A stretch of DNA of 64,000 nt from positions 11,346,001 to 11,410,000 of the forward strand of contig NC_043011.1 of the NCBI RefSeq assembly GCF_006345805.1. Direction: 5' to 3'. Both the position numbers and the translations under genes were made by a program. This stretch comes from Octopus sinensis. Lineage: Eukaryota. Positions 12,682 through 61,240 of this stretch are shown here, in pieces (position 1 is the stretch's first letter; each line of letters starts with the position of its first letter). The notes below the pieces were generated by a model. That model saw nothing but the letters and a program-made list of their open reading frames with translations, was not told the origin of the DNA and did not search any database.

Positions 12682-12689
<8 letters not shown>

Positions 12690-12714
<25 letters not shown>

Positions 12715-12849: not shown

Positions 12850-12945
12850 ATATTGTTACTACTACTGCTGCTACTGCTGCTGCTACTACTACTACTACTA
12901 CTACTACTACTAGTGCTATTGCTGCTGCTGCAGCTACTACTGCAG

Positions 12946-12984
<39 letters not shown>

Positions 12985-13032
12985 GTGCTATTGCTGCTGC
13001 TGCTGTAGCTGCTGCTGCAGCTACTACTGCAG

Positions 13033-13069
<37 letters not shown>

Positions 13070-13180
13070 AGCTGTTGCTACTGTTACTGCTGCTGCTGCT
13101 GCTACTACTACTACTACTAGTGCTATTGCTGCTGCTGTTGCTGCTGCTGCAGCTACTACTGCAGCTACTACTGCAGCTAC

Positions 13181-13224
<44 letters not shown>

Positions 13225-13255
13225 TCACAACCACCACCACCACCACCACCACCAT

Positions 13256-13290
<35 letters not shown>

Positions 13291-13350
13291 TTACTGCTGG
13301 TATTGTTGTTGCTGTTGTCATCATCATCACCATCATCATTATTATTACTA
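12850..13350. repeat. Compound trinucleotide repeat (ACT/GCT/ACC/CAT)
   Basis: Directly visible. It produces the spurious poly-T/A/V/S/L ORFs in the track. Confidence 0.95.
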
Positions 13351-13466: not shown

Positions 13467-16400
13467 TTATTTACTAGCAACCTGAGGAAGGGTTCCTTCG
13501 TACCCGTCTTTACTTATCAGCCAGAAAGTTGTCAGAGCACGTCCAGCAACAGTCATTTCTCCGCGTAGCTCAGTTTCATATCCTCCGAGTTGATCAAGAA
13601 TTTTTACTGTGTGTTCACTAAGCTGAATACGCAAAGGTTCTGAAGTCGATTCCATCGTGGCTGCAATTAACATTGTGTCGCCAAAAAGGGTGTAGCGCGG
13701 CATCTTTAAACCAACAACTCCGGCAACAACTGGTCCAGAGTGAGCGCCGATTCGCAACAGAAGTTTACAGTCTGGTAAATGCGGTACTTTCATTGCCAAC
13801 ATGGTTATGACTAAGTCCATTGCTGCTGTCGTAATTTCACCTGCATGAGCATTTCCATTTCGTTCGGGGACGCCACTTGCAACAACATAAGCATCTCCGA
13901 TAGTTTCCACTTTGTAGACGTCATATTTGTGCAGTATAGAATCGAATGTGCTGTAAAGGTTGTTCAACAGATCAACCACTTGCATAGGCTGACTGTTTTT
14001 CGCGATCGTTGTAAACCCGACTATATCGCTATAAAATACAGTGACACAGTTGAAGTCTTCTGGTTCCACTTTATTTCCGTGTTTTAATTCCTCTACCACT
14101 TTTTTGGGCAACATTTGACTTATAATATGATCAATTTTAGCCTTTTCTACTTCGAGGTCGTGGGTACGCTCAATCACCACTTGTTCGAGATTATTGGAAT
14201 AAGATTCCAATAGTCGAATTAAGTTGTCCATTAGTTCTCCCTTTGTCGGATGAATATTATCTAGCACTACAAGAAGCTTTGAAAATGGAGGTCTGAGCAG
14301 AGGTTCATCGTTCCATACGTCATCAAGCATTTTGAGAAATTTTCTCTGAGTTGTTTTCCCCTCTGGCAAATGTTCGCTTTTAAGTTGTGGCCGAATAACA
14401 AATATATCGCCTCCAATTGACTGCCATACTTTTCTCTCATCTTCTAGAAGAGGACTGTCTTTCTCCACTATGAGATCCAAAATAGCGCTTACAGATAGGA
14501 ACATCCGTTCATAAGCGTACGGTATGTCTCTGGTGGCAATTTCAGAAGCAATTATTCCAAATGAATAGACATCCCCTTCTTTAGTACCCATCTGAACGTC
14601 ATTTAGACACTCAACAGTTATTAGTAGTTCAGGAGCCGTCCAAAAAAGTTCGTTCATCTTTAATAATTCATACTGCCAATCTTTCTCTTCTCCAGCCATA
14701 AGGTACTGTCCATAGCGAATTGATGGACCGCCAAAACCGGACAAACGAATGCACCAGCGGTTATCAAGTAAACAATTCGATGATTTGAGACGTCCATGAG
14801 AGCCGATATTAGTTTTACTGTGAATGAAATCCATTCCACAGCAGATGTCTTTTAGAAAAGAAAATCGGAAATCCCAACCAAGTTGTATAGCATCATTGAT
14901 AAGAATATCTTCAAGACTGCCTTTATTCGCCGGCTCAAGAAAAAAAGACACGTTTGGATATGTGAGACAGGCTCCACCGTAAATGATTAAATTTTTGTGA
15001 TTCAAAGTCGTCAGTTCAACCATTTCTAGTCGGACCGCTTCATCATCAAGGTCAACGGTTCTACTGTTGAAGCGTTTCACAAACCATTTCTCACGCTTCC
15101 ACGTGTACAAATCATTAAACATTCGACTAACATGGGTCGCAGTTGAAACGTTCTTCGAATCTTTTTCTTGAGAATCGATTTTAACAGCTTCGTCCCAGAT
15201 AACGAGCCACTCGAGATTTGCCAGTGCAGTTCTGAGTTGGATGCGTTTGATTAAATACCTTATCAATAGATATATAAAACATATGAGCAACACTAGGGAA
15301 CAAATAACTGGAACGAGAATGGCTGCAAGGTGTATTGAGCAATATTTACCGAGCCACATTGATGATCTACACTGGCATTTATCGGGCTTCACGCATTTTC
15401 CATGTAAGCAAGGAGTGTTACATACCGGTTGGTCACAGCGCGGCCCTTTCCAGCCCGATTTACAGGTACATACGTCTGGAGTGTTACATCCGCCATGAAC
15501 GCAACTGCATGAAACATTCATACACCCATCTCCTAAATAGCCTTTGTTACATACACACACGTTCTCCGCAATGCAGACACCATTATTGAATACTGTAACA
15601 TCGTCTTGCGATATAAGATTACCACAGTTTTGTTTACACCTAAAAGGTGTTACTACCTTCTCCCTCCGGCGAAAGCCTATAGATGGCCATGGTTCGTTTG
15701 GAGCTTTAGCTAATATATTGTCATGCGCGCTAATCATTCCTGAAATTGAAGAATATTTTCTAATATTGTACGTATCAGCCATGGGAAGCGACATTGGTGG
15801 TAGTACATAATTATATGGAGGTTTATTCAATGGGTATTTAGCTTGGTAATTCACCTCTACTTCACCAGACTCTTTATATAGTACAAGTCTTATCGGGAGA
15901 GCTACTAAATTAGGGTCGGAATCAGAAGCATTGCCGATAGGATTAATCAAAATGATACTTCCCCTAAAGTCAGATCTTTTACCGGTCTCATCGAGACGCA
16001 CCTTTCCCGACAGTCCATTCAAATTAATTTTTTTCAGTTCATTTGAAATTTCATCTCCAAAAGCGGTCTTTTGTCGGGAAACTATATTGCTGATTGCTTG
16101 AGCCAACAGCCACATGGCATCATAACCCAGTGCCAAATAAGATGCTAGTTCTTCATTTGGATATATTGCTTTACTTCCTAAATACTCTGTTCTGTCAATG
16201 CTATAAAATCTTTCGAGTGTATGTAGCCATCTTTCGGTCCGGAAGTTTCCAAAATTGTAATTTTCTATAAATAGTAGTGACCCACGATAAGCATAGGTAC
16301 ATTTCGGTTCCCATTGACAGACGCCTTCGTTCATTAAAGGAAAGGATCGAGCATCTTCACTTATAAAAAGCCACTGATAACCGTCGAGTGCAGAAACACC

Positions 16401-18515
16401 AAATCGGATTCCAGAACGCAAAATGTATGGTAAAGAGCGAGTGGAAAAACAAATAATTATTTTTGTTCCGGCATCCTTTAGAGATCTCATTGCTTCACCA
16501 TAAAATTCTGGTTGCCAAGTGGTACCGGTGAAAGAATCGAATTCTGGGACGACCACTGGCATTGCGATCTTAATGTCGAATAATTGTGCTTTGTTGAAGA
16601 ATTCAATATCAACAGTCCTTCCGCTGGAGCTGATAGATGTTATCTTGAGCCATCTTCTAGCTTTACAAGCTCTCAGAAAAAAACTGTAAATTTCTGGCCA
16701 TCCCCAGCAAATTTTATTGAATAAATTGTATCGCAGAAAAGAATTATCTTTCTCAGTCAATGCAATGACTGGAATGTTGTCTATCATTGAGTTTCTGGCT
16801 ACGGCTTTTGTAATCAACGAACTTGCTGACAGAAGGATACCTCTCAATTCCGAATCGGTATTTTGATGTGTTTCTTTATACATTTGGTACTGCTGAACAG
16901 TAAATTCTATTTCATCATTAGTGTTGATTGATTCAACTGCAATTGACATACCATACTGTTCAAAAATTCCAGGAATCTCGCCCCAGCTTATGTCAGCAGC
17001 AGCAAATTTTACAAAAGTATCTATATGTGGATAAGGACTTTTAATCGTTCCAGCTGTATTGAAATCCCCAATGTGTCCTATGTGAACTAGACCAATCACA
17101 GAAAAAAGTGGAGAATTCACTACTGCAAATGAATGTGAAGATGAGGTAATTTCCATCACCACCGTAGTCATAATTGAACAAAATGAACCTCTCAGTTCCG
17201 CCAAGCCACCTGTTATTGATCTTGTCATATCCGTTGAAAGGCATGCATTCGGAGGGCGTGTTGTAATATTGAGGTTTATATTGGAATCTGGACCAGAGTA
17301 AATTCTATTATTGTTAGAATCTACAATTATTATTTTAATGTCTCCTGGAAGAGGAAAATTTCGAGTAATTATGTTACTTGAGTCATTTTTTAATTTGTGA
17401 CTAATTAATAACCTTGCAAGTTTCTGGGACTGAATATTAATAGGATTCGTAAAAGCCATAGCTGGAATTCCATCAATAATGCTGTCGGATAAATCAAAAA
17501 ATTTAACATAGTTTTCGGATTCATAAATATTTTTACGAGTTAAATCATCATAGCAAGTTTTACAGTTCGGTATTCTGATCCATGGATCTCTCGCCATATA
17601 CATAGTTAAATTCAAGCGAAAGCCGACAGCAACATCTAAAATCCGAATGTCTTTGAATGTAACTTTACCAGCTACGGCTTGTTGTCGTATAATTATATCA
17701 TTGGTACTTTGGTGTATCATGGTCGATTTGCCTGCCAATCGGATGTCCGTGTGTTTCAACATCATGTCTAGATTCTTTCGATAATAAAATTCTTTATAGC
17801 GATATGGTACAGTCAACTCTACAAAAGCGATGGAGTCTAGACCCGACGTAATAACTTTACCTACATTATCATGTATCTCGGCTTTAACGGTAAAACCTGT
17901 GTTGGCTCCGATTTGTACTGGTGGTTGTTTGGTGATGACGAGTTTAGCAGCAGGAGTGGTTATACGGAAAGGATGCGTGTCTATCGAAATAGATAGACCA
18001 GGGACATCGATTCTATATATTCGGTCGGTGTCTGGCACTAAATACGCATCGTGAGAATGCATAACCCAATCGATTATAATGGTTCCATTGAATACTTTCG
18101 CTTTTAGTGTGGTCGGTCCGATTGTCGAGCCACATTTCTTGACATATGTGTGGCGATTATATCTCATGGGTAGAAATACATCAGGATTAGTGTTTTGACA
18201 TAGCTTACCACCGGATATTCTCCAGTTGTCAACGTTCGCAGTACTCCTACTGGTCACTGTTACTTCTTGATCGTTTAGAGAACCATCCTTAACTTCACTT
18301 CCATCCAACCTATAAAAATAGGCAAAAATTGGATAACTAGTCAGTTCATTTAATGGTACTGAGTACTTCAAGTTGTATGGACTAGTTGGTATAACTTTAG
18401 GAGGCGAGTTGTGTTCGTCCAATCGAAGATTATATTGTTTTGCGGTAACCAACAGCAGTAGATAAAACAGGAAGATGTGACTGCTATAATAATGAGTACG
18501 CTCCAAGGAGAACAT
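13467..18515 (-). CDS. Atypical single-pass receptor guanylyl cyclase (natriuretic-peptide-receptor family) with an extended Ig-like/ANF/EGF ectodomain and a degenerate cyclase active site; single coding exon
   Basis: Uninterrupted 1682-aa ORF with an in-frame TAA 12 nt upstream of the ATG. Features in order: signal peptide (FLFYLLLLVTA); ANF/PBP1 motif ALGYDAMWLLAQAI...LNGLSGKVRLDETGKR; 3 EGF-like Cys repeats (15339-15638); TM (~15262-15330); kinase-homology HGRLKSSNC and FWTAPELL; coiled coil LESYSNNLEQVVIERT; cyclase VTVFYSDIVGFT, YKVETIGDAY, VVAGVVGLKMPRY. Confidence 0.95.
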   Translation of the reverse strand: MFSLERTHYYSSHIFLFYLLLLVTAKQYNLRLDEHNSPPKVIPTSPYNLKYSVPLNELTSYPIFAYFYRLDGSEVKDGSLNDQEVTVTSRSTANVDNWRISGGKLCQNTNPDVFLPMRYNRHTYVKKCGSTIGPTTLKAKVFNGTIIIDWVMHSHDAYLVPDTDRIYRIDVPGLSISIDTHPFRITTPAAKLVITKQPPVQIGANTGFTVKAEIHDNVGKVITSGLDSIAFVELTVPYRYKEFYYRKNLDMMLKHTDIRLAGKSTMIHQSTNDIIIRQQAVAGKVTFKDIRILDVAVGFRLNLTMYMARDPWIRIPNCKTCYDDLTRKNIYESENYVKFFDLSDSIIDGIPAMAFTNPINIQSQKLARLLISHKLKNDSSNIITRNFPLPGDIKIIIVDSNNNRIYSGPDSNINLNITTRPPNACLSTDMTRSITGGLAELRGSFCSIMTTVVMEITSSSHSFAVVNSPLFSVIGLVHIGHIGDFNTAGTIKSPYPHIDTFVKFAAADISWGEIPGIFEQYGMSIAVESINTNDEIEFTVQQYQMYKETHQNTDSELRGILLSASSLITKAVARNSMIDNIPVIALTEKDNSFLRYNLFNKICWGWPEIYSFFLRACKARRWLKITSISSSGRTVDIEFFNKAQLFDIKIAMPVVVPEFDSFTGTTWQPEFYGEAMRSLKDAGTKIIICFSTRSLPYILRSGIRFGVSALDGYQWLFISEDARSFPLMNEGVCQWEPKCTYAYRGSLLFIENYNFGNFRTERWLHTLERFYSIDRTEYLGSKAIYPNEELASYLALGYDAMWLLAQAISNIVSRQKTAFGDEISNELKKINLNGLSGKVRLDETGKRSDFRGSIILINPIGNASDSDPNLVALPIRLVLYKESGEVEVNYQAKYPLNKPPYNYVLPPMSLPMADTYNIRKYSSISGMISAHDNILAKAPNEPWPSIGFRRREKVVTPFRCKQNCGNLISQDDVTVFNNGVCIAENVCVCNKGYLGDGCMNVSCSCVHGGCNTPDVCTCKSGWKGPRCDQPVCNTPCLHGKCVKPDKCQCRSSMWLGKYCSIHLAAILVPVICSLVLLICFIYLLIRYLIKRIQLRTALANLEWLVIWDEAVKIDSQEKDSKNVSTATHVSRMFNDLYTWKREKWFVKRFNSRTVDLDDEAVRLEMVELTTLNHKNLIIYGGACLTYPNVSFFLEPANKGSLEDILINDAIQLGWDFRFSFLKDICCGMDFIHSKTNIGSHGRLKSSNCLLDNRWCIRLSGFGGPSIRYGQYLMAGEEKDWQYELLKMNELFWTAPELLITVECLNDVQMGTKEGDVYSFGIIASEIATRDIPYAYERMFLSVSAILDLIVEKDSPLLEDERKVWQSIGGDIFVIRPQLKSEHLPEGKTTQRKFLKMLDDVWNDEPLLRPPFSKLLVVLDNIHPTKGELMDNLIRLLESYSNNLEQVVIERTHDLEVEKAKIDHIISQMLPKKVVEELKHGNKVEPEDFNCVTVFYSDIVGFTTIAKNSQPMQVVDLLNNLYSTFDSILHKYDVYKVETIGDAYVVASGVPERNGNAHAGEITTAAMDLVITMLAMKVPHLPDCKLLLRIGAHSGPVVAGVVGLKMPRYTLFGDTMLIAATMESTSEPLRIQLSEHTVKILDQLGGYETELRGEMTVAGRALTTFWLISKDGYEGTLPQVASK

Positions 18516-18556: not shown

Positions 18557-18580
18557 CTGCAAAAACAAACACAACTAACA
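18557..18580 (-). promoter_or_regulatory. Putative splice acceptor of a 5' UTR intron of the cyclase gene
   Basis: The minus strand reads ttgttagttgtgtttgtttttgCAG|acacg, a T-rich tract plus CAG 41 nt upstream of the ATG. Confidence 0.5.
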
Positions 18581-19237: not shown

Positions 19238-20471
19238 CGAGGGGTGTTCATTAAAGATTTCCCCTGACCCACTTCCGGTTATTGCAGGAAACGGAACTCG
19301 TACAAGTATAATCATACACGTCTCTACACGTCACATTGTAAATTGCAGCTCTCCACTAGCATTCGTTTGTCTTTTAATCTGCTAAAGTGGACTAAGATGT
19401 TATAATATCGTACCCCAAAAGAGACTTTCAATGAGATGAAAGAAGCTTATGGTCACAATGCACCATCATACGACGTAGTCAAGCACTGGCATCGCCAGTT
19501 CAAATGTGGTTGGACATCTGTGGAAACTGCTTCTATCTCTGGACGACCACATTCCACCATTGATGACGACACCATCCAAAAAGTGGAAACCGCCATTTTA
19601 GAGGATCACTGCATAGCTATTCGGCAACTAGCGCAAGAAGTGAAGATAAGTGTATGGTCCGTGGAAAAAGTCATTCACGACCATTTGCACATGCAGAAGT
19701 TGTCTGCACAATGGATTCCCCGGATGCTCACACCTTTTCAAGAGCAGAAACGAGTCAATTGCTTTCAGGCTCATACGGCAATGTGCCAAGAAAACGACGA
19801 GGACTTTTTCGGCAGACTTATCCCACAGGATGAAACATGGGTCCATCACTATGATCCTGAGACTCGAGTCCAGTCGAAGCAATGGAAGCATGTTAACTTA
19901 CCACATCCAAAGAAGGTTCGTTTCCAATCCTCAGCAGGCAAGCTGATGCTCAGTCTTTTGGGACCAGCGTGGAGTAGTGATGATGGATTTTCTGACAAAG
20001 GTCACCACAATTAACGGGGGGGGGGCATATTATGCTTCTCTGCTGCAGAAATTGCGGAACGCCATCAAAGCAGAGAAGCGTGGCATACTGACCAAAGGAG
20101 TCCGCCTCCTCCGAGGCAACGCCCCATGTTGCCCAGATGAAAGCACAATCCTGCGGTTATGAAATCCTTTCTCATCCTTCTTACACTTCCAACCTTGTAC
20201 CATCTGACTTCCACTCCTTGCCAATCATGAAGTCTTTTTTGAAGTGTAAGCAATTTTCGGATGATGGACTTATTTCGGAGGTAAAGTATTGGCTCCAGAC
20301 GCAACCTACCGACTTCTACAGACGAGGCCTTCACAGCTGCATAAAACGATGGGAGAAGTGTGTCACCATTGGTTGTAGCTATGTAGAGAAGGACTAATAG
20401 TAATGCCCAGTTTCGTTTATCTCAGTGACTTGGGAAGTCGGTCAGGTGAAATCTTTAATGAACACCACTCA
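19238..20471 (+). mobile_element. mariner (DD34D) transposon, full length, decayed transposase
   Basis: TIRs of about 32 bp (CGAGGGGTGTTCATTAAAGATTTCCCCTGACC / GGTCAGGTGAAATCTTTAATGAACACCACTCA) with TA on both sides. ORF pieces contain WIPRML, DETWVHHYDPE and HPSYTSNLVPSDFH. Confidence 0.92.
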
Positions 20472-32479: not shown

Positions 32480-35400
32480 ATAATAATAATGTTCGTCCTT
32501 CGGTTCGAAGATGACCAACTGACATCATCTGATGGAACTGGCGCCATGAGACCGGATGTGGCTGGTGAGGCCAATCCGGGCAAGGAAGCCCCTCCCACAG
32601 GTGGGGCAGAAGTGGGTAGGGGCCGTGCTACTGGTGCAGGCGGCTCTGGCTTTACGCATCTGACGTTTCTGCTCCGCTGACCAAATCCGTCCCTCCTCGG
32701 CTGTCCCTGCTCCCACGGTGATTGCGCTGCGCCAGGATGAGCGGTTGGCAGCAAGTGTCTCCCAGGTCTCTGTTCCGATGGAGAAGTCTTTGAGAGAGAC
32801 CTTGAGACTATCCTTGTAGCGCTTCTTCTGCCCTCCGACTTTGCGCCTGCCCTGGCCGAGTTCACCGTAGAAGAGCTGTTTTGGGATGCGAGTGTCGGAC
32901 ATGCGGGAGACGTGGCCCGCCCATCTCAGCTGGGCCTTGCGCATGATTGTGATGGTGCTAGGGAGATCTGCCTGCTTCAGAACTTCCGTATCTGGGACTT
33001 TGTCCTGCCAGCGGATGTGAAGGAGGTTCCGAAGACACCTGAGATGGAAGTGGTTTATCTGGCGCTCGTGCCTTCGGTAAGCAGTCCACGTCTCGCAGCC
33101 GTATAGTAGGGTGGTAAGCACGACTGCCCGGTAGACTTTCAACTTGGTGTTGAGGCTGATTCCTCTCCGCTCCCAGACTTTCTTTCGCAGTCTCCCAAAC
33201 GCGCTGCTTGCCTTGGAGATTCTGTTGATGGTTTCAGCATCTATGTTGGCATTGCAGGAGAGAGTGCTGCCCAGGTAGGTGAAGTTTTCCACCACTCGTA
33301 GGATCCGTCCGTTCACCCTTATCTGAGGCTCATGGTATTGTTTGCCGGGGGCTGGCTGAAACATCACTTCGGTTTTCTTGGCACTGATGGTGAGACCGAA
33401 GTTGTCACAGGCTGATGAGAACCTGTCCATCTCGAGCTGCATCTCCTGCTCATCGATTGCATTAAGGGCGCAGTCGTCAGCAAAGAGAAAGTCTCTGACG
33501 ACTGTCTCCCTCACCTTTGTGACAGCCTGCAATCTTCTGGAGTTGAAAAGTTTCCCGTCTGTCCTGTACTTGATGTCGATACCGGACTTGCAGTCCCTAA
33601 AGGCGTCGGACAGCATTGCCGAGAACATGATGCTGAACAGTGTTGGGGCCAGGACACAGCCCTGCCTGACTCCGTTGGTCACCTGGAAGGCTTCAGATGA
33701 GTTGCCGTCTTCAAGGACTCTGGCTGTCATTCCGTCGTGGAACTGGTGGACAATTGCAATAAATTTGCTGGGGCAACCAAATTTTCCCATGACCTTCCAT
33801 AGTCCCTCCCGACTGACTGTATCAAAGGCCTTGGTGAGGTCAACAAAGGTCATGCAGAGGTCAAGGTGCTGCTCCATGCATTTCTCCTGGAGCTGGCGGG
33901 CGGCGAATATCATGTCAGTGGTCCCTCGACCCGCGCGGAAGCCACACTGGCTCTCAGGGAGAAGGCCTTGCTCCAAGTGTTCCAGAAGGCGGTCAAGCAG
34001 GACCCGGGCCAGGATCTTTCCTGCTATGGACAAGAGGGAAATACCTCGGTGGTTGTCGCAGGACTGCCGATCTCCTTTCCGCTTATAAATGTGGACGATT
34101 GTTGCGTCCCGGAAATCTTGAGGGAGTTGTTCCCTGTCCCACATCGACTGGAACAGGCTGGTGAGCTGACTGATCATGGTGGGGCCGCCCGACTTGAACA
34201 CCTCTGCAGGGATGGCGTCAGAGCCTGGAGCTTTGCCGGTGGACATTTTTTTGATGGCTCTGCTCACTTCCTCTACTGCAGGGGGAACAGCCAACTCGTG
34301 GTTTGTCGGCACCTGGGGGAGTCGTGCGATGGCTTCCTCGTTGATCTGGGCTGGTCGGTTGAGCACGATGTTGAAATGCTCCGCCCATCTCTCCAGGATC
34401 AGCCTCTTGTTAGTCAGGAGTGAGGTTCCATCCGAGCTGAGCAGGGGGGTTGATCCAAAGGAGAACTGCGGTCCATAGATAGCTCTCAGCGCCTCGTAGA
34501 ATTTCTTGGTGTCGTGTTTGTCTGCGTATCCCTGAATCTCATCCGCCTTGGCGCTTAACCATGTGTCTTGCATGAGGCGAAGTTTAGCCTGGACTGTGCT
34601 GCGAATGTTGTTGAAAGCGGCCTTCTTTGCCGTGCAGGTGGTGTCATTTTGGTGAGCCCGCAGCAGACGGCGTTTCTCTTCCAGGAGCTTCTGGATTTCC
34701 TGGTCGTTTTCGTCGAACCAGTCCTGGTGGTTCCTCGTAACTTGGCCCAGAGTTTCAAGGGCGATGGAATGAACCGTGTCCCTGAATGATTCCACTGCTC
34801 ATCGATGCTGGACTGGTCACTCCGAATGTCCAACAGCTTGCTGTCCATACGTGACTGGAGATCTTGTGCAGTCAGCTGGTTCTTTAATTTCGTGATGTTA
34901 AGCTTCCTCGTCACTTTCTGACCTTGTGGTCTTCTCTTAGGTCGGATGTAGAAATCCATCCTGGAGATGATGAGGCGATGGTCCGTCCAGCAGTCAGCTC
35001 CGCACATGGCTTTGACCAGTCTCACGTCCCGCCTGTCTTTCGCCCTGACGATGACGTAATCTATCAGATGCCAGTGTTTGGAGCGTGGATACATCCATGA
35101 TGTCTTGTTGCGTGTTGGCAGACGGAACAAGGTGTTGGCGATGGTAAGATCATGAGAGGCACACGCACGCAGGAGGAGCTGTCCGTTGCTGTTGCACTTT
35201 CCGATTCCTTGCTTTCCCAGTACGCGATGCCAGGCTTGGTGGTCAGTCCTGACACGGGCGTTAAAATCCCCAAGGAGGATGAGCTTCCCAGGCTGGGCTG
35301 ACGTGATGAGGGAGTCGAGTTCCTCATAGAACCTGTCCTTAACTTCTTCAGGGTTGGTCATGGTGGAGGCGTAAGCACTGATGATGGTCGCACTAGTCTT

Positions 35401-36265
35401 GTTTCCAAGTGGGAGCTGCATCTTCATCAGCCGATCGTTGATACCCTCGGGGGGGCTTTCCAGTTTCCGCACGTGTACTGACTTAATGGCAAAACCAACA
35501 CCAGCCTCACGACGCTCTTCGCTGCTGCGACCACTCCAAAAGAAAGTGTAGCCGCCGCCTGTCTCTGTCAGCTGGCCTTTGTCCGCAAGGCGGGTCTCGC
35601 TCAGTGCTGCAATATCGACATTGTATCGGCTCAGTTCTCTGGCCACCAGGGCAGTTCGTCTCTCTGGTCTGTCCGCTTTGGTGTTGTCAAGCAGAGTTCT
35701 CACGTTCCAAGTTGCGAAAGTGAGCACCTTTGTTTGTTTTCTTCTTTCTTTGTTTCGACCGCTTGGAAAGGATCCCCGCCAGCCGCGGTTTGCTGACCAG
35801 GGTGAGGTGAGGCAGGCTATGTTTAGGGCAACCTTTTCTAGCCCCGTCCTCATGCTGGGGAGGCGAGCAGAGCGATCCTGAAGAGGACTGCTCGGTCACT
35901 CAGGAGGCTGCCGGACTCCACTGCTGCCTCAGTTCAGTGAGGGGCGACCACATGTCCTGAGCCGCCTGTGTGTGGGTTCACGACTGCAGCTCCCAGTGTA
36001 TCCTCACCTGCTACTTCGCCGTTTCCCCATCGCCACAGGACTTTGGGATGGTGTCATGACGTCATGATGTCGTGACATGCGCGTGACTTGGATTATAGTG
36101 AGGGTGACTTGCGCAGGATCAGTCTCACTCTCTCGTCCTGGTGCGCCGGATCCAGTGGCAAGACAAAGTCAAGACGACTGGGGGTAGACCAAGATGCAAG
36201 AGCTGCCGGAAGGTGGCACGCATGGCGCAATCCAACCGCCTTAGGGGCTCCACTCCGGATTTTGG
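32480..36265 (-). mobile_element. Full-length RTE-clade LINE with 9-bp TSD and a single frameshift
   Basis: APE endonuclease ORF 34555-35853 (TWNVRTL, SETR, GDFNA, WHLIDY, TDH) overlaps RT ORF 32525-34795 (NHRGISLL, GVRQGCVLAP, FADD, C-terminal CPTC...HIRSH). It has an (ATT)n tail, and ATACAAATA occurs at 32471-32479 and 36266-36274. Confidence 0.95.
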
Positions 36266-38116: not shown

Positions 38117-39065
38117 TGCCTAAAGCTACGAAGTTTTCCGAAATTGAGCAAGGGAAATTCTTGCACTGAAAACGGAAGGAATGAGTACTTGGAAGGTTGC
38201 CGAGAAGATTCAGCGAAGCAGAACGCCAGTGGACAATTTTCTGAAAGATCCCAACGGCTACAACAGGGTTCGTGCTGGTGAACGTCTCAAGGCTACATCA
38301 GAAAGCGATGAAAAGCCCATTGTCAGGGTTGTGAAGAAGTCACGCTGCCCTTCTGTTTCCAAAATCAAGGTACCAGCAAGTCTAGGAGCCCCGACATCCA
38401 CCGTAAGAAGAGTGAGTTTGAACCATAGTTTCCACCTGAAGAACCGGCTACAGCGTCCGTTATTGTCCCCTTCTCACAAAGCTGTTAGATTGGAGTTTTC
38501 TCGGCAGCATCAGACGTGGGATGATGAATGGACCAAAGTTCTGTTCTCTAATGAGGACAAATGGAATTTGGATGGTTCCGGCGGTTATGAGTATTACTGG
38601 GCAGATAAATGTTTACAAAAATTCTACTTATTCCAAGTGGCAGAACAGCAGAGGAGATCTTATGGTGTAGGGAGCAATATCTATCAATGGGAAGCTGCCA
38701 CTTGTCATCATGGATGGCCATTTCAATGCTGCACGATACATCAATATGTTGGACGGGGCTCACATTGGCGAAGAAAGAAGACTCCATGGTGAGAACTTTA
38801 TATTTCAACAAGACAATGCTCCTATTCATAAAGCAAAGACGACTTTGGATTTCCTCCATGCAGTAGTATAGAGAATGCCTTGGAATATCTCACGAATGTT
38901 GTGCACAGCGAAGGCAAGCAGTATTCATCTGTTGGACTTGAAACGGCAATAAAGAAGGCCAAGGAACAGTTTCCACTTGATCTGCAGCAGGGGTTGATTG
39001 GGAGCATGAAATTGCGTGTCTTTGAAGTAATTCAGAAAGGTGGTGGTCACACACAACATTGTTGA
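38117..39065 (+). mobile_element. Tc1/Tc3-like transposase, decayed
   Basis: Contains RPLLSPSHKAVRLEF...WTKVLFSNEDKWNLDGSGGYEYYW, resembling Tc3 WSKVVFSDEKKFNLDGPDG, followed by FQQDNAPIH in a shifted frame. Confidence 0.85.
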
Positions 39066-57813: not shown

Positions 57814-60800
57814 TCACAGGCGAAACCTGAGAACTGGTCCATTTATACAGGCCAGTCTCGCACAATTCACCCACCTTTCATAAAACTTGCTATCGGACAG
57901 CACTTTCCTCTCTAACCTCATCTTCCTTTTCAAGTGAAACTTGAAAAAGTTGATGAGGCCTTGACCAAAGAGGAAAGTGTCTGACTTTAGCCCTTTCAAA
58001 CGAGTCCACCACACGACCTCTTTCGCCACAGCCACTAGGCACAAGAAAACGGCCTCGCCCTCCTTGTTAAAGGAGGTCGGCGGGGCAATCTTCACTATGG
58101 ATTCGGCCGATAGTCGGATCCGTCCTACACGTGACAGTAGCTGTTCGACATAAACCCATATTTCAGCAATACTCGGGCACTGGACGAGTGCGTGCAGAAC
58201 GGTTTCGTCGTCGTCCTGGCAACACCTCGGGCAGGCCCGGCTGACGGCACTTCCGTGCCGGTAGAGTTTATCTCGAACAGGCAGAGCCCCTCGGTAGCAC
58301 TGCCAGGCGAGAGACCTCTGGAAATTATCCATCGGCCCCGGCCCGAAAGTCCTCCCGAACAGACCGCTCAGTTCGTCGTCTTCAACGCCTAGAGTTTCCC
58401 GAGAACGTCGTCGCATTTTTCCTCTCACTACCCTCTATAGAACGCTAGAGTGGAGCTGTAACCGACCGCATTGCCCGCCTGGTGGAGGGCGGAGAGGGCT
58501 TGACGGCACTCGAGGTGCCAAGCGCCCTTTCTCGGTCTACGTTTGATCCAGGTCTGCAGCTCCGTCAAAGAGACGAGCTGCGGAAAATCGCGTCTGACAA
58601 AACGACCACACCTGTTCACCGTCTAGGAAGCGCTTGAGATGCCGCAGCCTGAGCGCATGTCTGCGCAACAGCAACCACGGAATTCCAGGCCTCCGTTCAG
58701 CGGTCGTTGACAGCAGATGGATCGCCTGACCAGTGGCACCTGACCCTTCCACAAAAGTCGAAGAGCAGGCGTACCAGCTTGGCCAACCAGCGTCGGGACA
58801 AGGGACGACGGTCAAGCGGTAACAGATGACGGATGCGATGTACGCATTCGCCACCTCCGCTCGACCTTTCAGGGACAGCTTCCTCTCGGTCCATTTCTGG
58901 GTGAGACGTGCCACCCTGCTCGTCACCTCTTCCCAGTTCTTATCCACCTGAGGTCCGGACCGAACCAGACCCCGAGCAGTTTAACGGGTCCGTCTGTCCA
59001 GCGCCCTACGACGCTGTTGGACGGCATGGGCTTGCCTCTCCAGGTGCCCAGTTGCAAGCCCACAGACTTTTCCGCGTTAATCTTTGCCCCTGTCACCGCT
59101 TCGTACTGGTTTAGCGTCTCGCCAATCAGGCCAATGTGCCTGTGGATCGACACCACCACGGTGACGTCGTGTCGGCATAAGCAGACACGCTGTTTCCGCC
59201 TCCTAGATCGTGCGGGATGCCCCTCAAAGCCTCCAACTTGCGCAGTAATGGCTCGAGAGTCAAAATGTACAAGAGGGAGGAGAGAGGGCATCCTTGGCGG
59301 ACCGAACGCGAGATGTCGAACGGTTCCGAAGGTGACCGTTCACCCGTATCACCGAGCAGATGTTGCTGTATAAAGCAGCGATCCACCCGCGGAAGACTGG
59401 ACCGAAGCCGGCTGCCTTGAGGACAGCTGCCAGGTACCGATGGTCGACCCTATCGAAGGCTTTACTCTGATCCAAGTTGATCAAAGCCCCACCCAGCGTC
59501 GTTACCCCCACCCTCTCTATGATGTAGCGCATGAGATGGAGGTTGTCGTGTATCGACCTGGTCGGCACGGCGCATGTCTGCGTCCCGCCGACCAGCTTGT
59601 CCACGACAAGCGCCAATCTCTTGGCTAGCACCTTGGCCAAATCTTCAACTCTGCATTGAGCAGAGTGATGGGCCGGAAATTCCTATAACGTCCCCCTTGT
59701 TTGGGTCCTTCTTTAGCAAAGCCACCACCCCTCGACAGACAAAAGCAGGAATTCTCCCGTTTTGCTGCCAGTTGCAGTAGACGTTTGCCAACAGGTCCGC
59801 AAACAAGTCTGGCATTGAAAAGTAAAGCTCGTAGGGCAGACCATCCAAACCCGGCGATCTACCTCTCGTGCAACTCTTCATCGCTTCCTGTACTTCCCAG
59901 GCAGATATCGGTCCTTCGCAGCACTCTGCCTCGCTGTCCGAGAGTTGCGGCAGTCCGTCCAGGTACACACCGAAGTCTGTACCGTTGGTGTCCGTTCCAC
60001 CGTTCGTCCCAAACAGTTGAGCAAAGTGCCGCTGAAGCACCGTACACATCTGCTTCGGTTGGGTAACCTCGCGCCCGTTCTGGTCCACCAAAGACCGAAT
60101 GGTTGCTCTGTTGCCTCGCTTCGCCTCCGCCACGCGGGCCCATCGAGCGGCTCTAGTCCCCTCCCCGCTTAGCGAACGTGCCTTAGCTCTGACAACGCAG
60201 CCTTCGTGTTTGGCGTCGAAGTGTTGGTCGAGGGCCAACCTTGCCGCCAACACGTCGGTCGCGATGCCAGTGTCAAGAGCCTCGTCTAGTTTCTTAACTA
60301 AATCCCGCTCTCTCTTCCTACGTTCAATAGCTAGAGTCTTACTATACCTAATCGACTCTACTCTAATTGTTCTCTTGAGGGCAAACCACCAGTTGTTGTT
60401 GATGATTGCCCCCGTGAGCGCCCGCTTAACTAGTAAACTAATCCGGTCTCTGTAAGCTTTGCACGCCGTTAACGACGCGTTCAGCTTCCAGTAGCCGGGT
60501 CCCTGTCTATGTAGCCTATCTAAGTCGACCGTACAGATCACTAATTTGTGGTCCGTATATTCGACTAGGTGGAATTGTGGACACCCTACGCTGTCCTTAT
60601 CCGCTGGCCTACAAAACACTCTATCTAAGTACGATCTAGACGACCCGATGCGGTTTGTCCAAGTCCACATTGGCACATTCGGGTTGTCTTGTCGAAACCT
60701 GTCGGACAGCTGAAAGCGGCCGAGTAGGTTGGCGAGGCTCTTGCACCCTCCCCCTCTCCTATCAGACGCTCCCCTGCCCACCCGATCGAAACGTTCGTCT

Positions 60801-61240
60801 AAGACAGCGTTCCAATCCCCAACTAGTACTAGAGTGCGTGACGTTCCCAGGAAAACTTCCAGACGTTTGAAATAATCCGACTGCCCTGCTCCTGTCGGAG
60901 CGTAGGCAGCCAGCAGTCTGAAAGCACCGCCGTCACTACCGTCCACGTCGAGGACCACCAACTTACCTTCCGGATCCAAGAAGACTGTCCTTATTTTCAG
61001 GTCCAGGCCCTTCCGAAACAACACCGCAGTACCACCACCGCCCGCTCCCGGCCGACACGGAGATAGAAATATCTCGTATCCGCCGAAAAGGGCTGCGAGT
61101 TCCTGCGGATCGGAGAGCCTGGTTTCACTGATGGCTGCTACATCCACATCATGAAACCTCAGGTCGTTTAACAGGTGACCCTGTTTCCAAGGTGACCCGA
61201 GGCCTCTCACATTCAAGCAACCGATTCTAAGATTTGCCAT
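57814..61240 (-). pseudogene. Tx1 ORF2 (APE endonuclease + reverse transcriptase), split by several frameshifts
   Basis: Consecutive ORF-track pieces 59645-61240, 59260-59640, 59126-59386, 58923-59291, 58537-58947, 58428-58619 and 57814-58428 each carry part of the ORF2 motif series. Confidence 0.88.

What the first reader, a model, noticed from the sequence alone, without database searches (positions are those of the whole stretch)
15339..18440. Unusual ectodomain: ~3 Ig-like 'KLV..QP' repeats + Venus-flytrap + 3 EGF repeats on a receptor GC
Seen in sequence: about 450 aa precede the ANF domain (nt ~17090-18440). They contain beta-rich repeats with a recurring spacing, such as AAKLVITKQPP...FTVKAEIHDNVGKVI...AGKVTFKDIRI...FTNPINI and LARLLIS...IKIIIVDSNNNRI...GGLAELRG...SPLFSVI. 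Three 6-Cys EGF-like repeats (15339-15638) lie between the ANF domain and the TM. Established: canonical receptor GCs (NPR-A/B, GC-C, retGC, speract receptor) have an ANF-type ectodomain alone. Inference: the repeat pattern recalls bacterial-type Ig-like repeats and the C-terminal region of fibrocystin-L. The architecture suggests a stalked adhesion, mechano- or chemosensory receptor, or binding of a large ligand or partner.
Basis: partly seen in the sequence, partly recalled or inferred. Interest (0 to 1): 0.72.

Follow-up and report, generated by a model that had tools for sequence, protein, structure and literature searches.

The report
Octopus receptor cyclase with degenerate active site
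This is an intact octopus gene for a cell-surface guanylyl cyclase receptor with three extra bacterial-type Ig-like domains and three EGF repeats around the usual ligand-binding domain, and its enzyme domain lacks three key catalytic-site residues, so it probably works only when paired with a sister receptor.

Summary
One uninterrupted ORF (13467-18515, minus strand, 1682 aa) encodes, in order:
- a signal peptide
- three Ig-like beta-sandwich domains (aa 28-478)
- a Venus-flytrap/ANF domain (aa ~479-900)
- three 6-Cys EGF repeats (aa 960-1059)
- one transmembrane helix
- a kinase-homology domain
- a cyclase domain

Ig-like domains 2 and 3 are sequence-homologous to tandem repeats of giant bacterial surface proteins. 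The suggested link to fibrocystin-L found no support.

The architecture is not unique to octopus. Full-length ~1690-aa orthologues exist in bivalves and gastropods, and a relative exists in a centipede. All are filed under generic or "uncharacterized" names, and I found no paper describing the architecture.

- The snail gene has at least 30 exons over 73 kb and the bivalve gene spans 342 kb, but the cephalopod copies are intronless and often tandem. This points to a retrogene-derived expansion.
- The cephalopod copies split into clades with reciprocal active-site changes. This gene's clade keeps both metal-binding Asp residues and the Glu, but has Cys->Thr, Asn->Leu and Arg->Thr. A sister clade keeps Cys/Asn/Arg but alters the opposite half of the site.

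The best reading is that this gene encodes the C1/alpha-like subunit of a heterodimeric receptor cyclase. That reading is inferred from sequence, not shown.

The parts
13467..18515 (-). Complete coding sequence, a single coding exon of 1682 codons plus the stop: receptor-type guanylyl cyclase, clade A.
   Evidence: ORF listing. 100% identical over its full length to CAI9736311.1 / A0AA36FEQ7 of Octopus vulgaris.
18441..18515 (-). Signal peptide (aa 1-25; hydrophobic core IFLFYLLLLV).
   Evidence: Read from the sequence. Modelled as an N-terminal helix with low pLDDT. Orthologues start the same way.
17958..18434 (-). Ig-like domain 1 (aa 28-186): an enlarged beta-sandwich with an insert holding the invariant pair Cys106/Cys128.
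   Evidence: AlphaFold2 shows about 11 strands. Invariant residues. Similarity to the bacterial repeat profile is not significant (E 0.05); in-register similarity to domain 3 is weak (E 2e-4 to 3e-4).
17424..17957 (-). Ig-like domain 2 (aa 187-364), with the 'AAKLVITKQPP...FTVKAEIHDNVGKVITSGLDS' motif. It is homologous to the bacterial Ig-like repeat and carries two insertions (about aa 237-270 and 308-352).
   Evidence: HMM built from bacterial repeats hits aa 187-231 at 2.9e-13. hhalign gives 97.7% probability, E 1.4e-12. pLDDT is mostly 85-96.
17082..17423 (-). Ig-like domain 3 (aa 365-478): a compact sandwich of about 8 strands with the nearly invariant pair Cys425/Cys446.
   Evidence: The bacterial repeat HMM hits aa 395-462 at 6e-5. 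hhalign gives 86.7% probability, E 4.4e-6 over 104 columns. Model.
15816..17081 (-). Venus-flytrap / ANF-receptor ligand-binding domain (aa ~479-900).
   Evidence: Pfam ANF_receptor. Alternating alpha/beta in the model. Foldseek target-normalised TM-scores: 0.73 to GABA-B (4mqf), 0.70 to human GC-A (9dzh), 0.69 to NPR-A (1t34).
15639..15815 (-). Linker (aa 901-959) with two long beta-strands (aa 916-924 and 947-955) between the flytrap and the EGF repeats.
   Evidence: Secondary structure of the model.
15339..15638 (-). Three 6-Cys EGF-like repeats (aa 960-1059), forming the membrane-proximal stalk.
   Evidence: Pfam EGF_2 is above its cut-off; EGF_TEN, EGF_PEAR1L and EGF_DL_JAG also hit. 18 Cys, all invariant in 17 sequences.
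15261..15326 (-). Single transmembrane helix (aa 1064-1085, AAILVPVICSLVLLICFIYLLI).
   Evidence: The only window with Kyte-Doolittle hydropathy above 1.8.
14256..15158 (-). Kinase-homology domain (aa ~1120-1420), a pseudokinase. The catalytic-loop motif reads HGRLKSSNC in place of HRDLKxxN.
   Evidence: Pfam PK_Tyr_Ser-Thr 72.8 bits and Pkinase 62.6 bits. Motif position.
14067..14255 (-). Helical dimerisation linker (aa ~1421-1483).
   Evidence: Weak HNOBA C-terminal match at aa 1437-1477. Aligns to the NPR1 linker.
13515..14066 (-). Class III nucleotide cyclase domain (aa 1484-1667).
   Evidence: Pfam Guanylate_cyc 180 bits. 236 bits to human NPR1 chains.
13647..13703 (-). Degenerate active-site motif MPRYTLFGDTMLIAATMES (aa 1605-1623). 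Against canonical MPRYCLFGDTVNTASRMES it has Cys->Thr, Asn->Leu and Arg->Thr.
   Evidence: Residue-by-residue alignment to human NPR1 and GC-C. Family table.
13887..14036 (-). Retained metal/phosphate-binding half of the site: YSDIVGFT (aa 1494-1502) and VETIGDAY (aa 1536-1543).
18557..18575 (-). Possible 3' splice acceptor (tgtgtttgtttttgcag) about 40 nt upstream of the ATG. It suggests a non-coding 5' exon further upstream.
   Evidence: Read directly from the sequence. This is an inference only.

Best explanation
What it is: the gene encodes a type I receptor guanylyl cyclase of an old protostome subfamily whose ectodomain is Ig-like x3, then Venus flytrap, then EGF x3.

How it arose: in molluscs outside the cephalopods the gene is multi-exon and its cyclase site is canonical. 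In coleoid cephalopods an intronless copy, most simply a retrogene, was duplicated, often in tandem. It diverged into clades whose cyclase domains degenerated in complementary ways.

Where this gene sits: it belongs to clade A.
- Clade A keeps the half of the active site that binds the metals and the phosphates (both Asp residues, the DIVGFT loop and TIGDAY) and keeps the Glu.
- Clade A has lost the guanine-specifying Cys, the ribose-binding Asn and the transition-state Arg.

Consequence: class III cyclases form each active site across the dimer interface, with the Asp residues from one chain and the Glu/Cys/Asn/Arg from the other. A clade A homodimer should therefore be nearly inactive.

Proposed mechanism: the most likely working form is a heterodimer with a clade B paralogue, which keeps Cys/Asn/Arg. 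That would give one competent site and one dead pseudo-site, as in adenylyl cyclase C1/C2, soluble guanylyl cyclase alpha/beta, and C. elegans ODR-1/DAF-11. In this picture:
- The flytrap, the most divergent domain among paralogues, binds the ligand.
- The rigid, disulfide-rich EGF stalk carries the conformational change to the membrane, as the Cys-rich domain does in class C GPCRs.
- The distal Ig-like arm binds a partner or holds the dimer geometry.

Shown: architecture, folds, homology, distribution, gene structure and residue substitutions.
Inferred: heterodimerisation, the ligand site, and the roles of the stalk and the arm.
For: Architecture and folds.

Active-site residues:
- Alignment to human NPR1 and GC-C shows Cys->Thr, Asn->Leu and Arg->Thr, with both Asp residues and the Glu kept.
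- All 5 clade A sequences share Thr at the Cys position, Leu or Gln at the Asn position and Thr or Asn at the Arg position, and 4 of the 5 have intact SDIVGFT and TIGDAY (P0087 has Asn at both Asp positions).
- All 12 clade B domains keep Asn and Arg, and 11 of 12 keep the Cys (one O. vulgaris domain has Phe). All 12 have Gly->Asp/Asn in DIVGFT, and TIGDAY reads TISDSY or a close variant.
- The bivalve and gastropod orthologues are canonical in both halves.
- The same Gly->Asp change is present in the C2 domain of mammalian adenylyl cyclase type II (FASIPDF, verified in 1ab8/1azs). The C1 domain of AC9 lacks the Arg, while its C2 domain keeps Asn and Arg.

Constraint: the degenerate cyclase domain is the most conserved part of the protein. 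Octopus against Argonauta gives 86% identity in the cyclase domain, 57% in the flytrap and 49-63% in the Ig-like domains. It is constrained, not decaying.

Partners in the same species: O. vulgaris has clade A (P0083) and clade B-type genes (P0085, P0088). Argonauta has P0004 (A) and P0007/P0093 (B).

Precedent: an obligate heterodimeric receptor cyclase, in which each monomer supplies essential residues, is described for ODR-1/DAF-11 (PMC5225109).

Gene structure:
- Gigantopelta orthologue: at least 30 exons over 73 kb.
- Potamilus orthologue: 342 kb range.
- Argonauta clade B: a 4860-nt range for 1619 aa, in a three-copy array.
- This gene and those in L001 and L002 are continuous ORFs.
Against: - Clade B keeps both metal-binding Asp residues, so it may be active as a homodimer and may not need clade A. 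The effect of its Gly->Asp/Asn change is unknown.
- There are no expression or co-expression data, and no biochemical data.
- Clade A and clade B genes lie on different large scaffolds in O. vulgaris and Argonauta.
- One clade A member (P0087) has also lost both Asp residues. That fits a non-catalytic role better than a C1-like role.
- A third clade, C, is degenerate in yet another way.
- Thr/Leu/Thr might leave some residual activity.
- The tree is a neighbour-joining tree without support values.
Confidence: 0.55

Rival explanations
1. Non-catalytic receptor (pseudo-cyclase). Clade A proteins never make cGMP. They act as ligand sinks, scaffolds, or dominant-negative partners that lower the output of canonical paralogues. 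This would be comparable in logic to the clearance receptor NPR-C, except that the dead cyclase domain is retained as a dimerisation or regulatory module.
For: The Asn and Arg are lost in all five clade A sequences, and P0087 also has both metal-binding Asp residues changed to Asn. The strong conservation of the cyclase domain is also compatible with a structural or regulatory role.
Against: Four of the five clade A members keep DIVGFT, TIGDAY and the Glu exactly. A pure scaffold would not need these. The changes in clade B are reciprocal, which a one-sided loss of function does not predict.
Confidence: 0.25
2. Ordinary homodimeric, ligand-activated receptor guanylyl cyclase. The Thr/Leu/Thr substitutions are tolerated or compensated.
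For: All domains of a receptor cyclase are present and intact. The ORF is open over 5 kb. The cyclase domain scores 180 bits against Pfam and 236 bits against NPR1.
Against: The equivalent Asn and Arg are catalytic in class III cyclases; this rests on established knowledge of AC IIC2 Asn1025 and Arg1029, recalled and not tested here. They are kept in NPR1, GC-C and AC9 C2 and in the canonical mollusc orthologues. The substitutions are fixed across the clade rather than sporadic.
Confidence: 0.15
3. Decaying retropseudogene or assembly/annotation artefact.
For: The gene is intronless and lies among transposon remnants. RefSeq for O. sinensis splits it into a 472-aa model and a 1160-aa model.
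Against: The ORF is 1682 codons without a stop. The O. bimaculoides protein (1683 aa) falls in the same 90%-identity cluster, and the Argonauta orthologue (1681 aa) is 66% identical. All 18 EGF Cys residues and the fold-defining residues are conserved. Conservation follows domain boundaries.
Confidence: 0.03

Closest known systems
Vertebrate natriuretic peptide receptor A (NPR1/GC-A) and GC-C
   Same: Type I topology. ANF-type Venus-flytrap ectodomain (Foldseek target-normalised TM-score 0.70 to 9dzh). Kinase-homology domain, helical linker and class III cyclase domain (236 bits).
   Different: The octopus protein has about 450 extra N-terminal residues forming three Ig-like domains, and three EGF repeats between the flytrap and the membrane. 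It has Cys->Thr, Asn->Leu and Arg->Thr in the active site. Its coding sequence is intronless.
C. elegans ODR-1/DAF-11 obligate heterodimeric receptor cyclase (PMC5225109)
   Same: These are receptor cyclases in which each chain lacks residues the other supplies, so a single catalytic site forms. The complementary pattern seen in cephalopod clades A and B follows the same logic.
   Different: It arose independently, after a cephalopod-specific duplication. The nematode proteins have only the ANF-type ectodomain. Heterodimerisation is demonstrated there and only inferred here.
Adenylyl cyclase C1/C2 and soluble guanylyl cyclase alpha/beta pseudo-symmetric dimers
   Same: One competent site and one degenerate site. 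Clade A resembles C1 in keeping the Asp residues while lacking the Arg, as AC9 C1 does. Clade B has the Gly->Asp change found in IIC2, FASIPDF.
   Different: Here the two halves sit on two separate single-pass receptors, each with its own large ectodomain. Clade B still keeps both Asp residues.
Bacterial Ig-like repeats of giant surface proteins (Big_1 / invasin-like)
   Same: Domains 2 and 3 align with the bacterial repeat profile over the whole domain, including the motif 'L.vt.QPP..v.ag..f.v.v.v.D..GN.vt.....v.l' and the 'G.atF..l.i' strand. Invasin (1cwv) is the second-best structural match.
   Different: There is no Pfam Big_1 hit on the octopus protein. Even the bacterial consensus reaches only 22 bits against a cut-off of 34.9. 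The octopus domains carry long insertions and disulfides. They sit on a metazoan signalling receptor.
Class C GPCRs (CaSR, mGluR): Venus flytrap plus Cys-rich stalk
   Same: A flytrap is followed by a rigid, disulfide-rich stalk just before the membrane. CaSR chains align over 550-630 columns.
   Different: The stalk here is three EGF repeats, not the 9-Cys CRD. The effector is a single-pass cyclase, not a 7TM domain.

Membership tests
Receptor (membrane) guanylyl cyclase | Signal peptide and a single transmembrane helix (type I topology) | tested here: met
   There is an N-terminal hydrophobic leader. Only one hydropathy peak is found, at aa 1064-1085.
Receptor (membrane) guanylyl cyclase | ANF-receptor-type Venus-flytrap ectodomain | tested here: met
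   Pfam PF01094, 49 bits against a cut-off of 25.4. Foldseek target-normalised TM-score about 0.7 to GC-A/NPR-A ectodomains.
Receptor (membrane) guanylyl cyclase | Kinase-homology domain lacking the catalytic HRD Asp | tested here: met
   PF07714 and PF00069 hits. The motif reads HGRLKSSNC.
Receptor (membrane) guanylyl cyclase | C-terminal class III cyclase domain | tested here: met
   PF00211, 180 bits. NPR1 match at E 2.9e-69.
Receptor (membrane) guanylyl cyclase | Complete catalytic set in one chain (two Asp, Glu, Cys, Asn, Arg), allowing an active homodimer | tested here: not met
   The two Asp and the Glu are kept. Cys->Thr, Asn->Leu, Arg->Thr.
Heterodimeric class III cyclases (AC C1/C2, sGC alpha/beta, ODR-1/DAF-11) | Complementary degeneration of the two half-sites in two paralogous chains | tested here: met
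   Clade A loses Cys/Asn/Arg. Clade B alters DIVGFT and TIGDAY. The outgroups are canonical. Caveat: clade B keeps both Asp residues.
Heterodimeric class III cyclases (AC C1/C2, sGC alpha/beta, ODR-1/DAF-11) | Physical heterodimer, with activity that depends on both chains | not testable with these tools
   Needs co-expression, co-immunoprecipitation and cGMP assays.
Bacterial Ig-like domain, Big_1-like | Match to the Pfam Big_1 model at its gathering score | tested here: not met
   There is no Pfam hit on aa 1-475 at E<=10. The consensus of the bacterial relatives scores only 22.2 bits against 34.9.
Bacterial Ig-like domain, Big_1-like | Ig-like beta-sandwich fold | tested here: met
   The AlphaFold2 model is all beta with pLDDT 81. 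The top Foldseek hits, PrgB Ig-like domains and invasin, have probability 1.00.
Bacterial Ig-like domain, Big_1-like | Sequence homology to bacterial tandem repeats | tested here: met
   Domain 2: 97.7% probability, E 1.4e-12. Domain 3: 86.7% probability, E 4.4e-6. Domain 1 is not significant.
EGF-like repeat | Six Cys per repeat with EGF spacing, and a Pfam EGF model above its cut-off | tested here: met
   3 x 6 Cys at aa 960-1059, invariant in 17 sequences. EGF_2 scores 32.2 bits against 22.1.
Fibrocystin-L (PKHD1L1) C-terminal region | Detectable sequence similarity to the N-terminal module | tested here: inconclusive
   No hit is longer than 2566 aa, so no fibrocystin-sized protein matched at E<=0.001. 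That library carries no names, and I made no direct comparison with the fibrocystin-L sequence.

The most novel reading that the evidence does not exclude
After retroposition of a long-ectodomain receptor cyclase gene, coleoid cephalopods built a combinatorial set of heterodimeric receptor guanylyl cyclases. Three intronless clades (A, B, C) carry reciprocally degenerated half-sites and fast-diverging flytrap domains. cGMP output would then require two different ectodomains to be engaged, giving a coincidence detector. Separately, the Ig-like arm, whose only detectable relatives outside the family are bacterial repeats, may have entered a protostome ancestor from bacteria.
Probability: 0.35. 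Interest if true: 0.78.

Novelty: new variant of a known kind. Interest (0 to 1): 0.62.

Why it matters
- Receptor guanylyl cyclases are textbook homodimers with a single flytrap ectodomain. Here a conserved mollusc and myriapod subfamily adds two further extracellular modules, one of which has no Pfam model. Current annotation therefore shows about 450 blank residues.
- The cephalopod radiation of this subfamily looks like a natural experiment. A symmetric homodimeric enzyme appears to become an asymmetric heterodimer by reciprocal loss after duplication. That is the same route proposed for adenylyl cyclase C1/C2 and soluble guanylyl cyclase, but here it is recent enough to compare with intact outgroups.
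- It adds a cGMP-linked receptor family to the known lineage-specific receptor expansions of cephalopods.
- It gives a directly testable prediction: A alone should be dead, and A+B should be active.
- It flags a RefSeq model in O. sinensis that splits the gene in two.

Tried and rejected
- Pfam on aa 1-475 at E<=10: nothing.
- PDB sequence search with the N-terminal region: only a chance hit at E 1.5. With the bacterial repeat consensus: only compositional hits to designed 'Pizza' proteins.
- The word-indexed protein search, run with the N-terminal region and then with a 14-sequence alignment, returned only three proteins each time. It missed relatives that the exhaustive search found. The second of these searches was wasted.
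- Domain 1 against the bacterial repeat profile: not significant (E 0.05). I therefore call domain 1 Ig-like on the structure alone.
- Similarity among the three octopus domains is weak: E 8e-5 to 9e-3.
- Pseudogene or artefact: rejected on ORF length and the pattern of conservation.
- Fibrocystin-L: no support.
- Seven literature searches for a description of this architecture or of a cephalopod cyclase expansion found only general reviews. Subscription journals are not covered.
- The organism behind the intron-containing homologue in L003/L004 (ENA ERZ19433661) and behind ERZ21867824 could not be named. Clustering of related Logan proteins with a Sepia pharaonis fragment suggests a decapodiform cephalopod for some of these sequences.
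Full report
**The gene.** The finding lies inside one uninterrupted ORF on the minus strand, 13467-18515, 1682 codons. Amino acid n begins at nt 18515-3(n-1). The protein is 100% identical over its full length to CAI9736311.1 / UniProt A0AA36FEQ7, 'receptor-type guanylate cyclase gcy-4-like [Octopus vulgaris]'. UniRef lists the identical sequence for two Octopus taxa. O. bimaculoides has a 1683-aa 'uncharacterized protein LOC106877831' in the same 90% cluster. RefSeq for O. sinensis splits the gene into a 472-aa 'uncharacterized' model and a 1160-aa model. The sequence is thus deposited, but only under automatic names.

**Domains by profile.** Pfam finds ANF_receptor, several EGF models over aa 962-1063 (EGF_2 above its cut-off), PK_Tyr_Ser-Thr/Pkinase at aa 1141-1414, and Guanylate_cyc at aa 1484-1667 with 180 bits. 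The only strong hydropathy peak after the leader is aa 1064-1085. The EGF stretch holds 18 Cys, arranged 3 x 6, and all are invariant in a 17-sequence family alignment. The first 475 residues have no Pfam hit at E<=10 and no sequence match in the PDB.

**The N-terminal module.**
- An exhaustive HMMER search of 1.84 billion representatives found 70 proteins at E<=0.001. They fall into two kinds.
- The first kind is receptor cyclases, or fragments of them, that match most of aa 16-490. They come from Argonauta hians, unnamed cephalopod contigs, the bivalves Sinanodonta, Tegillarca and Saccostrea, the gastropod Gigantopelta and the centipede Strigamia.
- The second kind is long proteins that match aa ~160-235 many times over. 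Those that could be characterised are bacterial: a Bdellovibrionales MAG protein with 14 matched stretches, a protein with a prepilin N-methylation motif, and one with a planctomycete extracellular motif.
- I cut out 116 such repeat units and built an HMM. Its consensus (…ATQLVVTTQPPASVTAGSGFGLTVEVEDAYGNVVTS…VNGVATFSGLTLDKAGTGYTLQATS…SAFNVT) hits octopus aa 187-231 at 2.9e-13 and aa 395-462 at 6e-5. Against Pfam it gives only a sub-threshold Big_1 match.
- In profile-profile comparison with 17-sequence sub-alignments, domain 2 (aa 187-364) scores 97.7% probability (E 1.4e-12). Domain 3 (aa 365-478) scores 86.7% (E 4.4e-6) over the whole domain. Domain 1 (aa 28-186) is not significant.
- AlphaFold2 with a 14-sequence alignment gives pLDDT 81.4 and pTM 0.76, almost all beta.
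- The best Foldseek PDB matches are tandem Ig-like arrays: PrgB, invasin, NUP210, complement and alpha-2-macroglobulin MG domains, Chlamydomonas mastigoneme, SbsC and Hoc.
- The 'three Ig-like repeats of bacterial type' reading therefore holds. The qualifier is that domain 1 is assigned by fold only, and domains 1 and 2 carry large insertions.
- No hit at E<=0.001 is longer than 2566 aa (the largest related sequence seen is a 2583-aa cluster-mate). The fibrocystin-L suggestion therefore found no support.

**The rest of the ectodomain.**
- A model of aa 1-1067 (17 sequences; pLDDT 82.4, pTM 0.64) shows an alpha/beta flytrap at about aa 476-890, a two-strand linker, and the EGF repeats.
- Foldseek aligns the flytrap with GABA-B (target-normalised TM-score 0.73), human GC-A (0.70) and NPR-A (0.69). 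It also aligns, over longer stretches, with CaSR chains that include their Cys-rich stalk.
- The order from the far end to the membrane is Ig1-Ig2-Ig3-flytrap-EGF3-TM. The EGF repeats are therefore the stalk, and the Ig-like domains are a distal arm.

**Distribution and gene structure.**
- Full-length relatives of about 1690 aa with the same Pfam content occur in Potamilus streckersoni (bivalve) and Gigantopelta aegis (gastropod). There are several copies per cephalopod.
- The Strigamia protein T1JDE2 has domains 2 and 3, ANF, EGF, the kinase-homology domain and the cyclase domain.
- An unnamed eukaryote in ENA ERZ19433661 has the same order of parts, with short introns.
- The Gigantopelta gene has at least 30 coding exons over 73 kb. 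The Potamilus gene spans 342 kb.
- By contrast, this gene, those in L001 and L002, and the Argonauta clade B genes are continuous ORFs. The Argonauta genes form an array of three copies, and L002 has two in tandem.
- A neighbour-joining tree places the bivalve and gastropod proteins outside a cephalopod-only radiation with clades A, B and C. It has no support values.
- The simplest history is retroposition of the ancestral multi-exon gene in the cephalopod lineage, followed by tandem duplication.
- A polypyrimidine-AG about 40 nt upstream of the ATG suggests a non-coding 5' exon. This is an inference.
- Retroposition plus tandem duplication has been reported for another receptor family in lophotrochozoans (title and abstract of PMC6896357, seen).

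**The cyclase site.**
- Aligned with human NPR1 and GC-C, the motif MPRYCLFGDTVNTASRMES reads MPRYTLFGDTMLIAATMES.
- From established knowledge of class III cyclases (adenylyl cyclase IIC2 Lys938/Asp1018/Asn1025/Arg1029, with Glu/Cys at the first two positions in guanylyl cyclases; recalled, not tested here), these are the guanine-specifying Cys, the ribose-binding Asn and the transition-state Arg.
- Both metal-binding Asp residues (YSDIVGFT, ETIGDAY) and the Glu are kept.
- Across the family:

| Group | Metal/phosphate half | Cys/Asn/Arg half |
|---|---|---|
| Clade A (5 sequences, including this gene) | canonical in 4 of 5 (P0087 has Asn at both Asp positions) | Thr, Leu or Gln, Thr or Asn |
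| Clade B (12 domains) | DIVGFT becomes DIV(D/N)F(S/A/C/G); TIGDAY becomes TISDSY or a close variant | Asn and Arg in all 12; Cys in 11 of 12 |
| Clade C (3 sequences) | altered | altered |
| Bivalve and gastropod orthologues | canonical | canonical |

- The Gly->Asp change of clade B is the one found in adenylyl cyclase IIC2 (FASIPDF, confirmed in 1ab8/1azs). AC9 C1 lacks the Arg, whereas AC9 C2 keeps Asn and Arg.
- The degenerate cyclase domain is the best-conserved part of the protein. Against Argonauta it is 86% identical, compared with 57% for the flytrap. Against the orthologue that is 85% identical overall, it is 98% identical.

**Mechanism.** In class III cyclases each active site is built across the dimer interface. 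A clade A homodimer would pair good Asp residues with a Thr/Leu/Thr half and should be nearly inactive. An A/B heterodimer would have one complete site (Asp residues and the phosphate loop from A; Glu/Cys/Asn/Arg from B) and one doubly degenerate pseudo-site. This is the arrangement of adenylyl cyclase C1/C2 and soluble guanylyl cyclase, and of the obligate ODR-1/DAF-11 receptor pair in C. elegans (PMC5225109). Both clades occur in the same species. I put about 0.55 on this reading, 0.25 on a non-catalytic regulatory receptor, 0.15 on a tolerated, active homodimer and 0.03 on a pseudogene. The roles of the flytrap (ligand binding; it is the most divergent domain), the EGF stalk (rigid coupling, by analogy with class C GPCRs) and the Ig-like arm (partner binding or dimer geometry) are inferences.

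**Comparison and novelty.** The protein meets every architectural criterion of a receptor guanylyl cyclase but fails the 'complete catalytic set' criterion. It is therefore a member of the family by descent and probably not an autonomous enzyme. Reviews describe the standard receptor cyclase as ectodomain-TM-KHD-linker-cyclase (PMC1435932; PMC5225109). I found no description of the Ig3-flytrap-EGF3 form, of its cephalopod intronless expansion, or of the reciprocal site changes. The search covered open-access papers and bioRxiv only. I rate it a new variant of a known kind, interest 0.62.

Noticed in passing
window 12682-12714 and 12857-13295: Long trinucleotide arrays lie just 3' of the gene's stop codon: ATC x11, and an imperfect TAC-type array of about 146 copies. 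They produce spurious ORFs of 190-216 aa rich in Thr, Ala, Ser, Val or Leu on both strands. They probably lie in the 3' UTR or flank.
   Followed up: partly
window 32525-35853 (-), 57814-58428 (-), 59645-61240 (-): ORFs of LINE-type retrotransposons: reverse transcriptase (RVT_1, 115 bits), two endonuclease (Exo_endo_phos) ORFs and a zf-RVT ORF. They coincide with the two G+C-rich stretches of the window (0.55-0.58). Such elements could supply the machinery for the retroposition proposed for this gene family.
   Followed up: partly
window 19436-20014 (+) and 38181-38792 (+): Remnants of mariner/Tc1-type transposases, with weak Mos1 HTH and Tc3 transposase HTH hits. The first lies about 900 nt upstream of the gene's start codon.
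   Followed up: no
O. sinensis RefSeq models P0001 (472 aa) and P0098 (1160 aa): The O. sinensis annotation splits this single ORF into two models. The first leaves the ORF at about aa 463 and ends in 8 unrelated residues. The O. vulgaris and O. bimaculoides models are full length.
   Followed up: partly
P0087 (ENA contig, 1698 aa): One clade A member has also changed both metal-binding Asp residues to Asn (YSNIIGFM, ETMGNAY). On either half-site it should be fully inactive.
   Followed up: no
P0006, P0095, P0096 (clade C); P0006 shares contig 48168 with the clade B protein P0092: A third cephalopod clade is degenerate in a different way: Glu->Asp, Asn->Asp/Glu, Arg->Lys/Gly in two of its three members, and an altered DIVGFT. 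At least one member lies on the same contig as a clade B gene.
   Followed up: partly
P0012, Strigamia maritima T1JDE2: The centipede relative also has Asn->Leu and Arg->Tyr (PRYCIFGEDVLIAQYLEA). Its gene model has a gap in the cyclase domain. Whether this loss is shared with clade A or independent is open.
   Followed up: no
L003/L004 9965-19472 (ENA ERZ19433661): An unidentified eukaryote in a metagenome assembly carries a homologue with the same order of parts (Ig1-2, Ig3, EGF, kinase-homology domain, cyclase) and short introns. It represents a divergent subfamily that also includes P0022, P0026, P0059 and P0018.
   Followed up: partly
P0085 (2485 aa) and P0088 (1866 aa), O. vulgaris: These 'speract receptor-like' models each contain two cyclase domains. 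They look like neighbouring tandem genes fused by the annotation.
   Followed up: no
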